Shown piece by piece: positions 24,527 through 25,047 of a stretch of DNA of 64,000 nt. Both the position numbers and the translations under genes were made by a program. The stretch spans positions 52,886,001 to 52,950,000 of the forward strand of contig NC_043013.1 of the NCBI RefSeq assembly GCF_006345805.1, given 5' to 3'. The stretch comes from Octopus sinensis (lineage: Eukaryota). The notes beneath the pieces were generated by a model. That model was not told where the DNA came from and did no database searches. It worked only from the letters and a program-made list of their open reading frames with translations. Positions within the stretch are counted from its first letter, which is position 1. Every line of letters begins with the position of its first letter.

Positions 24527-24901
24527 TATTTAATAGCGTTCTGTTTATCATTTATGCAGTCATCAAAATTGTAATAATGTCTTGTAGTTGAGATAGGTTC
24601 TCTTTCTTTCCTGATGAGAAGATTGCATAATTTTACACCGTTTATTTCTTTGGAATAAAACCAATGTTGTCTTCGAAACATATGTCCAAAGTAAAAGAAT
24701 TTGAATATATATATATATATATATTCAAATTCTTTTACTTTGGACATATGTTTCGAAGACAACATTGGTTTTATTCCAAAGAAATAAACGGTGTAAAATT
24801 ATGCAATCTTCTCATCAGGAAGGAAGAGAACCTATCTCAACTACAAGATATTATTACAATTTTGATGACTGCATAAATGATAAACAAAACGCTATTAAAT
24901 A
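24527..24901. repeat. 375-bp near-perfect palindrome centred on (AT)n at 24714/24715
   Basis: Arms are reverse complements with only about three differences; ORFs 24358-24765(-) and 24664-24876(+) share the same N-terminal translation. Confidence 0.97.
24598..24699 (+). ncRNA. Hammerhead ribozyme motif with intact core (mirror copy on minus strand 24730-24830)
   Basis: CTGATGA 24611-17, stem II GAAGA/TCTTC, GAAAC 24675-79, palindromic AC-ATAT-GT loop III, GTC^ at 24686, stem I ctttc/caaag with a C-C mismatch next to the core. Confidence 0.75.
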
Positions 24902-24951
24902 ATATACATAATTCCTCATCACTTAAATATAAAACTGTAATATATATGTGC

Positions 24952-24992
<41 letters not shown>

Positions 24993-25047
24993 CACATATA
25001 TATTACAGTTTTATATTTAAGAGATGAGGAATTATGTATATTATTTA
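24896..25047. repeat. Second palindrome (about 150 bp) centred on (TA)n near 24971
   Basis: aaataatatacataattcctcatc(a/t)cttaaatataaaactgtaatatatatgtgcgtgt is mirrored at 24985-25047. Confidence 0.95.

What the first reader, a model, noticed from the sequence alone, without database searches (positions are those of the whole stretch)
24527..25047. Nested double palindrome explained by inverted re-insertion of a small circle through (TA)n
Seen: the structure A'-(AT)n-A-B-(TA)n-B', with arms of about 180 bp and 55 bp. The outer ends of A' (24527-32) and B' (25042-47) share the direct microhomology tattta, and the A-B junction (24896-901) is exactly its reverse complement, taaata. Inference: an ancestral A'-(TA)n-B' was copied as a microhomology-closed circle, or by a double template switch, and re-entered its own self-complementary TA tract in the opposite orientation. 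This would be a microsatellite-driven way to build long palindromes and dsRNA.
Basis: partly seen in the sequence, partly recalled or inferred. Interest (0 to 1): 0.8.

Follow-up and report, generated by a model that had tools for sequence, protein, structure and literature searches.

The report
Double fold-back scar at TA microsatellite
Two back-to-back perfect hairpin-forming palindromes in octopus-like non-coding DNA are most simply the healed scar of one break inside a long (TA)n microsatellite, a neat natural example of a known repair route rather than a new mechanism.

Summary
Window 24527-25047 holds two adjacent palindromes, not nested ones. P1 is 24527-24901 (arms 178/177 nt around (AT)10; 3 substitutions and 1 indel). 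P2 is 24896-25047 (76-nt arms including half of (TA)15; 3 mismatches). They overlap by exactly 6 nt (taaata).

The host is cephalopod, octopus-like, repeat-rich non-coding DNA. No gene, RNA family or transposon fits the arms, and nothing like them recurs in the 64 kb.

An ancestor L-A'-(TA)n-B'-R is supported. An older inverted copy at 25669-25733 shows that the end of B' was already contiguous with its right flank.

The small-circle step is not needed. One break in the (TA)n, fold-back of both self-complementary TA ends, copying of 177 nt and about 59 nt of each flank, and joining at the 6-nt microhomology gives 515 of 522 aligned columns of the observed sequence.

This matches the known chemistry of snap-back SD-MMEJ, fold-back priming, and TA-repeat cruciform cleavage with Pol theta MMEJ. 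It is unusually long and two-sided.

Sequence alone cannot separate the break, fork-switching and circle routes. I could examine neither reads nor an orthologous allele. Interest is moderate.

The parts
24527..24704 (.). A': left outer arm of palindrome P1 (178 nt). Inferred to be the original sequence, contiguous with the unique left flank 24290-24526.
   Evidence: (I1, I2).
24705..24724 (.). (AT)10 centre of P1. Inferred to be the left remnant of the ancestral TA microsatellite and the fold-back point of the left end.
24725..24901 (.). A: inverted copy of A' (177 nt; 3 substitutions and 1 indel against A').
24896..24901 (.). taaata: 6 nt shared by the end of A and the start of B. Inferred to be the microhomology at which the two inverted copies were joined.
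   Evidence: chance p = 0.002-0.004.
24896..24954 (.). B: inverted copy of B' (59 nt, including the compound atatatgtgcgtg border).
   Evidence: (I8).
24955..24984 (.). (TA)15 centre of P2. Inferred to be the right remnant of the ancestral TA microsatellite and the fold-back point of the right end.
24985..25047 (.). B': right outer arm of P2. Inferred to be original. Its last 17 nt (25031-25047) are part of an older repeat block that continues into the right flank.
24527..24532 (.). tattta at the outer end of A'. Template of the taaata made on the left tail.
25042..25047 (.). tattta at the outer end of B'. End point of copying on the right tail.
25031..25095 (.). Context: left arm of an older inverted duplication (P3). 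It spans the P2 boundary and anchors B' to its right flank.
25669..25733 (.). Context: right arm of P3 (92% to 25031-95), followed by (TG)n(TA)9 at 25734-25758.

Best explanation
The feature is a mutational scar, not a gene or a mobile element.

Inferred starting point: an ancestral locus L-A'-(TA)n-B'-R, with n of roughly 25 or more, suffered one double-strand break inside the TA microsatellite. Long TA tracts extrude hairpins and cruciforms and are cut by structure-specific nucleases.

Inferred steps:
1. Each broken end terminated in self-complementary TA repeats and folded back on itself. This happened either by snap-back of the resected 3' tail followed by DNA synthesis, or because cruciform cleavage left hairpin-capped ends that were nicked at a distance.
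2. The left end thereby acquired an inverted copy of 177 nt of its own flank (A). The right end acquired an inverted copy of about 59 nt of its flank (B).
3. The two new 3' ends (...taaata-3' on the top strand, ...tattta-3' on the bottom strand) are complementary over 6 nt. They were joined by microhomology-mediated end joining and then filled in.

Shown directly: the anatomy, the exact 6-nt overlap, the equal divergence of the two palindromes, and the prior existence of the B'-R junction. Inferred: the break, the fold-back, the enzymes and the order of steps.
For: - The structure A'-(AT)10-A/B-(TA)15-B' with an exact 6-nt overlap is real.
- An in-silico two-ended fold-back plus 6-nt join, starting from the ancestor obtained by joining 24714 to 24972, matches 515 of 522 aligned columns of 24527-25047.
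- The two 3' tails predicted by the model are mutually complementary over exactly the observed 6 nt. A chance overlap has p = 0.002-0.004.
- Both palindromes have the same arm divergence (3/177 against 1/50, p = 1), as expected from one event.
- They are the only two complex-armed palindromes among about 37 palindromic centres in the window, nearly all TA/AT simple repeats, and they abut.
- B' is anchored to its flank by the older, more diverged P3 copy (5/65 against 4/227, p = 0.03).
- The A-B segment has no terminal inverted repeats of its own, by direct reading of its ends. Nothing else in the window resembles A, B or L.
- No protein or RNA family explains the arms.
- Literature supports each step: AT/TA repeats form cruciforms cut by Mus81-Mms4/Slx4 and need Mre11 hairpin processing (PMC12972899). 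TA-repeat breaks are cut by ERCC1-ERCC4 and repaired by Pol theta MMEJ (PMC13645644). The snap-back SD-MMEJ model is described in PMC5728401. Yeast fold-back insertions at a DSB run from 10 to over 150 bp (PMC11724301). Fold-back priming by Pol delta is shown in PMC10622511.
Against: - No ancestral or orthologous allele could be examined, and no reads, so the pre-event state is an inference.
- Documented snap-back insertions are mostly under 35 nt and one-sided. Here 177 nt and about 59 nt were copied on both sides at once, and I found no published case of that.
- A 7-8 nt microhomology (atatttaa at 24526-33 and 25013-20) lay nearer on the right side and was not used.
- The 2% arm divergence needs either age or error-prone synthesis.
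- The sequence cannot distinguish this route from serial template switching at a fork or from the circle model.
Confidence: 0.5

Rival explanations
1. Serial template switching at a stalled replication fork (FoSTeS/MMBIR-like; the reader's 'double template switch'). The nascent strand hairpins in the TA tract and copies itself backwards, making A. It then jumps by the 6-nt microhomology to the other strand at 25042-47 and copies back to the TA tract, making B. It finally returns to the proper template.
For: The product is identical to the observed sequence (same logic). Short template-switch mutations that create perfect hairpins in one step are documented (PMC5453318, PMC8794818). AT/TA repeats stall or are bypassed by replisomes (PMC12972899).
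Against: It needs three switches in a fixed order, against one break with two symmetrical ends. A single four-point template switch cannot give A-B, because its reverse complement (B'-A') is permuted relative to the ancestor. There is no independent evidence for it.
Confidence: 0.2
2. A copy of A'-(TA)n-B' was closed into a circle of about 290 bp at the tattta microhomology. It re-entered the chromosomal TA tract in inverted orientation by a crossover between the self-complementary TA tracts.
For: It yields exactly the observed order and the taaata junction. From memory, circles of this size with microhomology junctions (microDNA) exist. Non-B microsatellites do spawn eccDNA by replication-dependent template switching (PMC11161834).
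Against: It needs more steps: copy-out without loss of the chromosomal copy, circle closure, and inverted homologous integration through about 20-60 bp of TA. My literature search for re-integration of small circles found no precedent for such an inverted re-entry. Nothing in the sequence calls for a circle.
Confidence: 0.07
3. Two independent events or elements. Either two palindromic (foldback/MITE-like) transposons landed side by side, or there were two successive one-sided fold-back repairs. Alternatively the whole 521 bp is one copy of a composite repeat family.
For: MITE-like palindromes do occur in this window (7299-7556 between TA microsatellites; 43684-43837). P1 can be read as flanked by TA/TA, a Tc1/mariner-type target duplication. 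Copy number in the rest of the genome could not be checked.
Against: - Exact abutment of the only two complex-armed palindromes in 64 kb has a rough chance of about 3e-4, my own estimate. A 6-nt shared end adds p of about 0.003.
- The TA tracts sit at the centres, not the flanks.
- There are no other copies in the window.
- The end of B' lies inside a pre-existing local repeat block.
- The arm divergences are equal.
Confidence: 0.08
4. Assembly or sequencing artefact, such as a fold-back chimeric read or graph mis-traversal through the self-complementary TA tract.
For: TA tracts and palindromes are hard to sequence and assemble. No reads were available to me.
Against: - The structure is internal, with normal unique flanks on both sides.
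- The arms differ by substitutions, 3 of them in P1, which a reverse-complement graph path or a single chimeric read would not produce.
- A 6-nt junction is far below any assembler overlap.
- The two-sided reciprocity is not a known artefact pattern.
Confidence: 0.07

Closest known systems
Snap-back synthesis-dependent MMEJ / Pol theta-mediated end joining templated insertions (Drosophila, mammals; PMC2943611, PMC5728401)
   Same: A 3' end next to a break folds back on a short inverted repeat and copies its own flank in reverse complement. The nascent end then pairs with the other side by a few nucleotides of microhomology.
   Different: Published insertions are usually a few to about 30 nt and one-sided. 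Here both ends did it, copying 177 nt and about 59 nt, and the primer repeat is a whole TA microsatellite. Enzyme dependence is untested.
Local fold-back insertions at an HO break in yeast (PMC11724301)
   Same: Inverted copies of the break-proximal flank, 10 to over 150 bp, made by fold-back at a nearby inverted repeat and ligated to the second end.
   Different: The yeast events are one-sided, Pol delta-dependent and captured by NHEJ with 0-5 bp microhomology. This case is two-sided with a 6-nt junction in an animal germline.
Fold-back inversions / inverted duplications by fold-back priming (PMC10622511, PMC7467729, PMC3907307)
   Same: A break near short inverted repeats, intrastrand annealing, fill-in, and a palindromic junction with a short spacer.
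   Different: Those lead to hairpin-capped chromosomes, dicentrics, kb-to-Mb duplications and terminal loss. Here synthesis stopped after under 200 nt, the two ends were rejoined, and nothing was lost.
TA/AT-repeat fragility: cruciform cleavage and MMEJ repair (PMC12972899, PMC13645644, PMC8053094)
   Same: A long (TA)n tract as the site of a structure-driven break, with hairpin processing and Pol theta MMEJ as the repair route.
   Different: Those studies report deletions, small duplications and rearrangement breakpoints. They do not report paired long palindromes centred on the two halves of the repeat.
Short template-switch mutations (four-point model; PMC5453318, PMC8794818)
   Same: One-step creation of perfect inverted repeats and hairpins from nearby sequence.
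   Different: One switch-and-return gives a single contiguous reverse-complement patch. A-B is a permuted pair of patches and would need an extra switch.
ODIRA inverted triplication via hairpin-capped extrachromosomal DNA (PMC10766183)
   Same: Template switching at short inverted repeats, an extrachromosomal intermediate, and re-integration.
   Different: ODIRA gives three copies with the middle one inverted, and it spans an origin. Here each arm exists in only two copies and the scale is a few hundred bp.

Membership tests
Snap-back SD-MMEJ / TMEJ templated insertion | The inserted DNA is the reverse complement of sequence directly flanking the break. | tested here: met
   A is the reverse complement of A' (98%) and B is the reverse complement of B' (96%), each adjacent to its template across the TA tract.
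Snap-back SD-MMEJ / TMEJ templated insertion | A break-proximal inverted 'primer repeat' allows hairpin priming. | tested here: met
   Both palindrome centres are pure, self-complementary TA tracts of 10 and 15 units.
Snap-back SD-MMEJ / TMEJ templated insertion | There is microhomology between the nascent end and the other side at the final junction. | tested here: met
   There is an exact 6-nt overlap, taaata, at 24896-24901. Chance p = 0.002-0.004.
Snap-back SD-MMEJ / TMEJ templated insertion | Short, non-processive synthesis (typically about 30 nt or less) and Pol theta dependence. | tested here: not met
   The copied tracts are 177 nt and about 59 nt, beyond the usual range. Polymerase dependence is not testable with these tools.
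Fold-back inversion (large inverted duplication) | The palindromic junction is accompanied by a large duplication and loss or replacement of the distal segment. | tested here: not met
   Both flanks are retained, and the duplicated tracts are under 200 nt.
Palindromic MITE / foldback transposon | Multiple dispersed copies with the same ends. | tested here: inconclusive
   No other copy of A, B, L or the junction exists in the 64-kb window.
Palindromic MITE / foldback transposon | Element ends are independent of the flanking host sequence, with a target-site duplication. | tested here: not met
   The last 17 nt of B' belong to a local block that continues into the flank and is duplicated in P3. 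The two palindromes share 6 nt. A TA/TA 'duplication' around P1 is itself palindromic and so uninformative.
ODIRA inverted triplication | Three copies of the segment with the middle one inverted. | tested here: not met
   Each arm is present exactly twice.
   The sequence is compatible, but no circle data exist. My searches found no precedent.
Rfam miRNA precursor families (mir-297/466/3688 etc.) | The score reaches the family gathering threshold. | tested here: not met
   All hits on 24671-24758 and 24931-25012 score about 25-62 bits against thresholds of 50-100, occur on both strands, and are typical of TA/CA low-complexity hairpins.

The most novel reading that the evidence does not exclude
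This is not a one-off. Each event would create a pair of long perfect hairpins de novo, and so a steady supply of dsRNA-forming loci: raw material for hairpin RNAs, miRNAs or ADAR editing substrates. One clear case, plus a possible older one (P3), in a single 64-kb window would imply thousands genome-wide if the window is typical.
Probability: 0.12. Interest if true: 0.65.

Novelty: new variant of a known kind. Interest (0 to 1): 0.35.

Why it matters
If the reading is right, this locus is a clean, germline-fixed natural record of a reaction otherwise seen mainly in reporter assays and cancer genomes: a break in a TA microsatellite healed by fold-back copying and microhomology joining.

It is notable in three ways:
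- It happened on both ends at once.
- It is much longer than usual snap-back insertions.
- A simple dinucleotide repeat was turned in one step into 375-bp and 152-bp perfect hairpins.

It gives a concrete, searchable signature: A'-(TA)-A|B-(TA)-B' with junction microhomology. That signature could be used to measure how often microsatellite breaks create palindromes in animal genomes. As it stands it is a single scar with no demonstrated function.

Tried and rejected
- **Coding or TE origin of the arms.** The 135-aa ORF through A' (24358-24765, minus strand) has no Pfam domain. It has no exact match on record and no word-indexed homologue. A full HMMER scan gave one weak hit, to a tandem-repeat protein, which is not meaningful. 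I treat it as a chance ORF.
- **RNA gene.** Rfam gave only sub-threshold, two-strand hits to TA/CA-rich miRNA families. There are no tRNAs.
- **Other copies and orthologous allele.** There are none in the window. Two metagenome scans gave 0 hits. The Octopus bimaculoides locus, reached through the neighbouring LINE, shares only the LINE and SINE families and is not orthologous. Ten further ORFs have no Pfam domain, so no single-copy gene was available as an anchor.
- **521-bp insertion with a 6-bp tattta target duplication.** Rejected, because the hexamers are part of the palindromes and the ends A' and B' share no terminal repeat.
- **A-B as a transposon inserted into a TA tract.** Rejected, because its two ends are not inverted repeats of each other.
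- **hAT/RAG-type excision footprint (hairpinned flanks, P nucleotides).** The geometry is the same, but from memory such footprints are a few nucleotides long, not 59-177 nt.
- **Palindromic centre in the SINE-head fragment of P3.** No strong hairpin was found, so the origin of P3 is left open.

Full report
**Context**

The window is AT-rich (about 34% G+C), crowded with microsatellites, SINE copies and LINE fragments. The LINE reverse-transcriptase ORF just left of the finding (22956-24320, minus strand) has an RVT_1 domain. Its best database hit is an Octopus bimaculoides protein at 76% identity, and it is 83% identical at the DNA level to that copy. The host is therefore a cephalopod, most likely an octopus. 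The region is non-coding, since ten further ORFs have no Pfam domain.

**The observation**

- P1 spans 24527-24901. A' (24527-24704) and A (24725-24901) flank (AT)10. The arms are 178 and 177 nt and differ by three substitutions and one 1-nt indel.
- P2 spans 24896-25047 with 76-nt arms around (TA)15 (24955-24984). It has three mismatches, two of them at the TA/CA border.
Because each palindrome's start is the reverse complement of its end, the three hexamer statements reduce to one fact: P1 and P2 overlap by exactly 6 nt (taaata, 24896-24901).

In this base composition, a total chance extension of 6 nt or more has p = 0.002-0.004, so the shared hexamer is probably a real junction microhomology. 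As single-stranded DNA the region folds into two adjacent near-perfect hairpins (dG -260 kcal/mol, z = -52 against shuffles). Of about 37 palindromic centres in the window, nearly all of them TA/AT-type simple repeats, only these two have complex arms, and they abut. The palindromes are adjacent, not nested.

**What it is not**

- The long ORF that runs through A' has no Pfam domain and no credible homologue in either protein search.
- Rfam gives only sub-threshold, both-strand hits to TA/CA-rich miRNA families.
- No other copy of A, B or the left flank exists in the window.
- The A-B segment between the two TA tracts has no terminal inverted repeats of its own.
- True MITE-like palindromes in the window (7299-7556 and 43684-43837) look different. 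Their TA sequences lie outside the element, not at its centre.
- Two independent elements landing exactly side by side and sharing 6 nt is very unlikely.

**Which arms are original**

The stretch 25031-25095 runs across the right boundary of P2 (25047|25048). It has an inverted copy at 25669-25733 (92% over 65 nt). Outward, both copies continue into (TA)n(CA)n, with a 39-nt indel between them.

This older inverted duplication (P3) is more diverged than P1 and P2 (5/65 against 4/227 differences, p = 0.03). The end of B' was therefore already joined to its right flank before P2 arose. B' is original, and B is a copy that stops at an arbitrary point. P1 and P2 have the same arm divergence (3/177 against 1/50), consistent with a single event.

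**Mechanism**

A simpler route gives the same product.

1. One double-strand break occurs inside the TA tract.
2. Both ends, which terminate in self-complementary TA repeats, fold back. This happens either by snap-back of the resected 3' tails with synthesis, or as hairpin-capped ends left by cruciform cleavage and nicked at a distance.
3. The left end gains A, ending ...taaata-3'. The right end gains B, whose bottom strand ends ...tattta-3'.
4. These two 3' ends are complementary over 6 nt and are joined by microhomology-mediated end joining.

Simulating this from the ancestor (24714 joined to 24972) matches 515 of 522 aligned columns of 24527-25047. The seven differences are the arm mismatches.

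Each step has published support:

- AT/TA repeats form hairpins and cruciforms, are cut by Mus81-Mms4/Slx4 and need Mre11 processing (PMC12972899; see also PMC8053094).
- TA-repeat breaks are made by ERCC1-ERCC4 and repaired by Pol theta MMEJ (PMC13645644).
- Snap-back synthesis followed by annealing of the nascent end to the other side is the SD-MMEJ model (PMC5728401; PMC2943611).
- Fold-back insertions of 10 to over 150 bp occur at a yeast HO break (PMC11724301).
- Fold-back priming with Pol delta fill-in is established (PMC10622511).

What is unusual here is that both ends did it, and over 177 nt and about 59 nt. I found no published two-sided case.

**Rivals**

- Serial template switching at a stalled fork gives the same product but needs three ordered switches. 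A single four-point switch (PMC5453318) cannot produce the permuted A-B pair.
- The circle model needs still more steps, and I found no precedent for inverted re-entry of a small circle. Microsatellite-derived eccDNA does exist (PMC11161834), and ODIRA (PMC10766183) is a distant relative of the idea.
- An assembly artefact is unlikely. The arms differ by substitutions, the junction is only 6 nt, and the flanks are normal. I could not inspect reads.

Sequence alone cannot separate the break, fork and circle routes. My estimates are 0.5, 0.2 and 0.07, with 0.08 for independent events or elements and 0.07 for an artefact.

**Verdict**

The feature is best filed as an unusually long, two-sided variant of known fold-back and MMEJ repair at a fragile TA microsatellite. 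It is a scar with no demonstrated function. Interest is moderate. It would rise if a genome-wide scan showed the signature to be common.

Noticed in passing
window 24972-25760 (arms 25031-25095 and 25669-25733): A third, older inverted duplication (P3). Its 65-nt arms are 92% alike. Outward they extend to (TA)n(CA)n on both sides, with a 39-nt indel. Inward they extend to (ATT)25 (25092-25167) and (AAT)111 (25238-25568) in opposite orientation. The centre is a 65-nt tRNA-like SINE-head fragment (25168-25232), and a 98-nt stretch (25571-25668) is present on the right arm only. Its origin is unexplained. It may be an earlier rearrangement of the same fragile locus.
   Followed up: partly
window 7299-7556 and 43684-43837: Two MITE-like palindromic elements with long terminal inverted repeats (76% and 83%). 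The first sits between TA microsatellites. Neither recurs in the window.
   Followed up: partly
window 22877-24203 (minus strand) and 26783-27298 (minus strand): A 5'-truncated LINE with an RVT_1 domain, 83% identical in DNA and 76% in protein to an Octopus bimaculoides copy. A compound TA/TACA/TGCA microsatellite (24204-24285) sits at its truncation point. A second ORF that reads like a LINE reverse-transcriptase C-terminus (my reading of its translation; no Pfam hit) lies at 26783-27298.
   Followed up: partly
window 25781-25935 and at least 7 other sites (e.g. 5562-5714, 11392-11545, 20033-20178, 20459-20609, 59116-59267): A SINE family of about 150 nt, 72-83% alike between copies and also present in the O. 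bimaculoides locus L001. The copy at 25781 directly follows the (TA)9(GA)n at the right end of P3.
   Followed up: no
window 24526-24533 and 25013-25020: An 8-nt direct match (atatttaa) between the two flanks lies nearer the TA tract on the right side than the 6-nt microhomology actually used. This shows that the junction was not simply the first or longest microhomology available.
   Followed up: no
window 10001-14000: A stretch with strong positive GC skew (0.25-0.32) and higher G+C (0.44 at 10-12 kb). It contains long (AT)n, (TATG)n and (AGAT)52 arrays and was not examined further.
   Followed up: no
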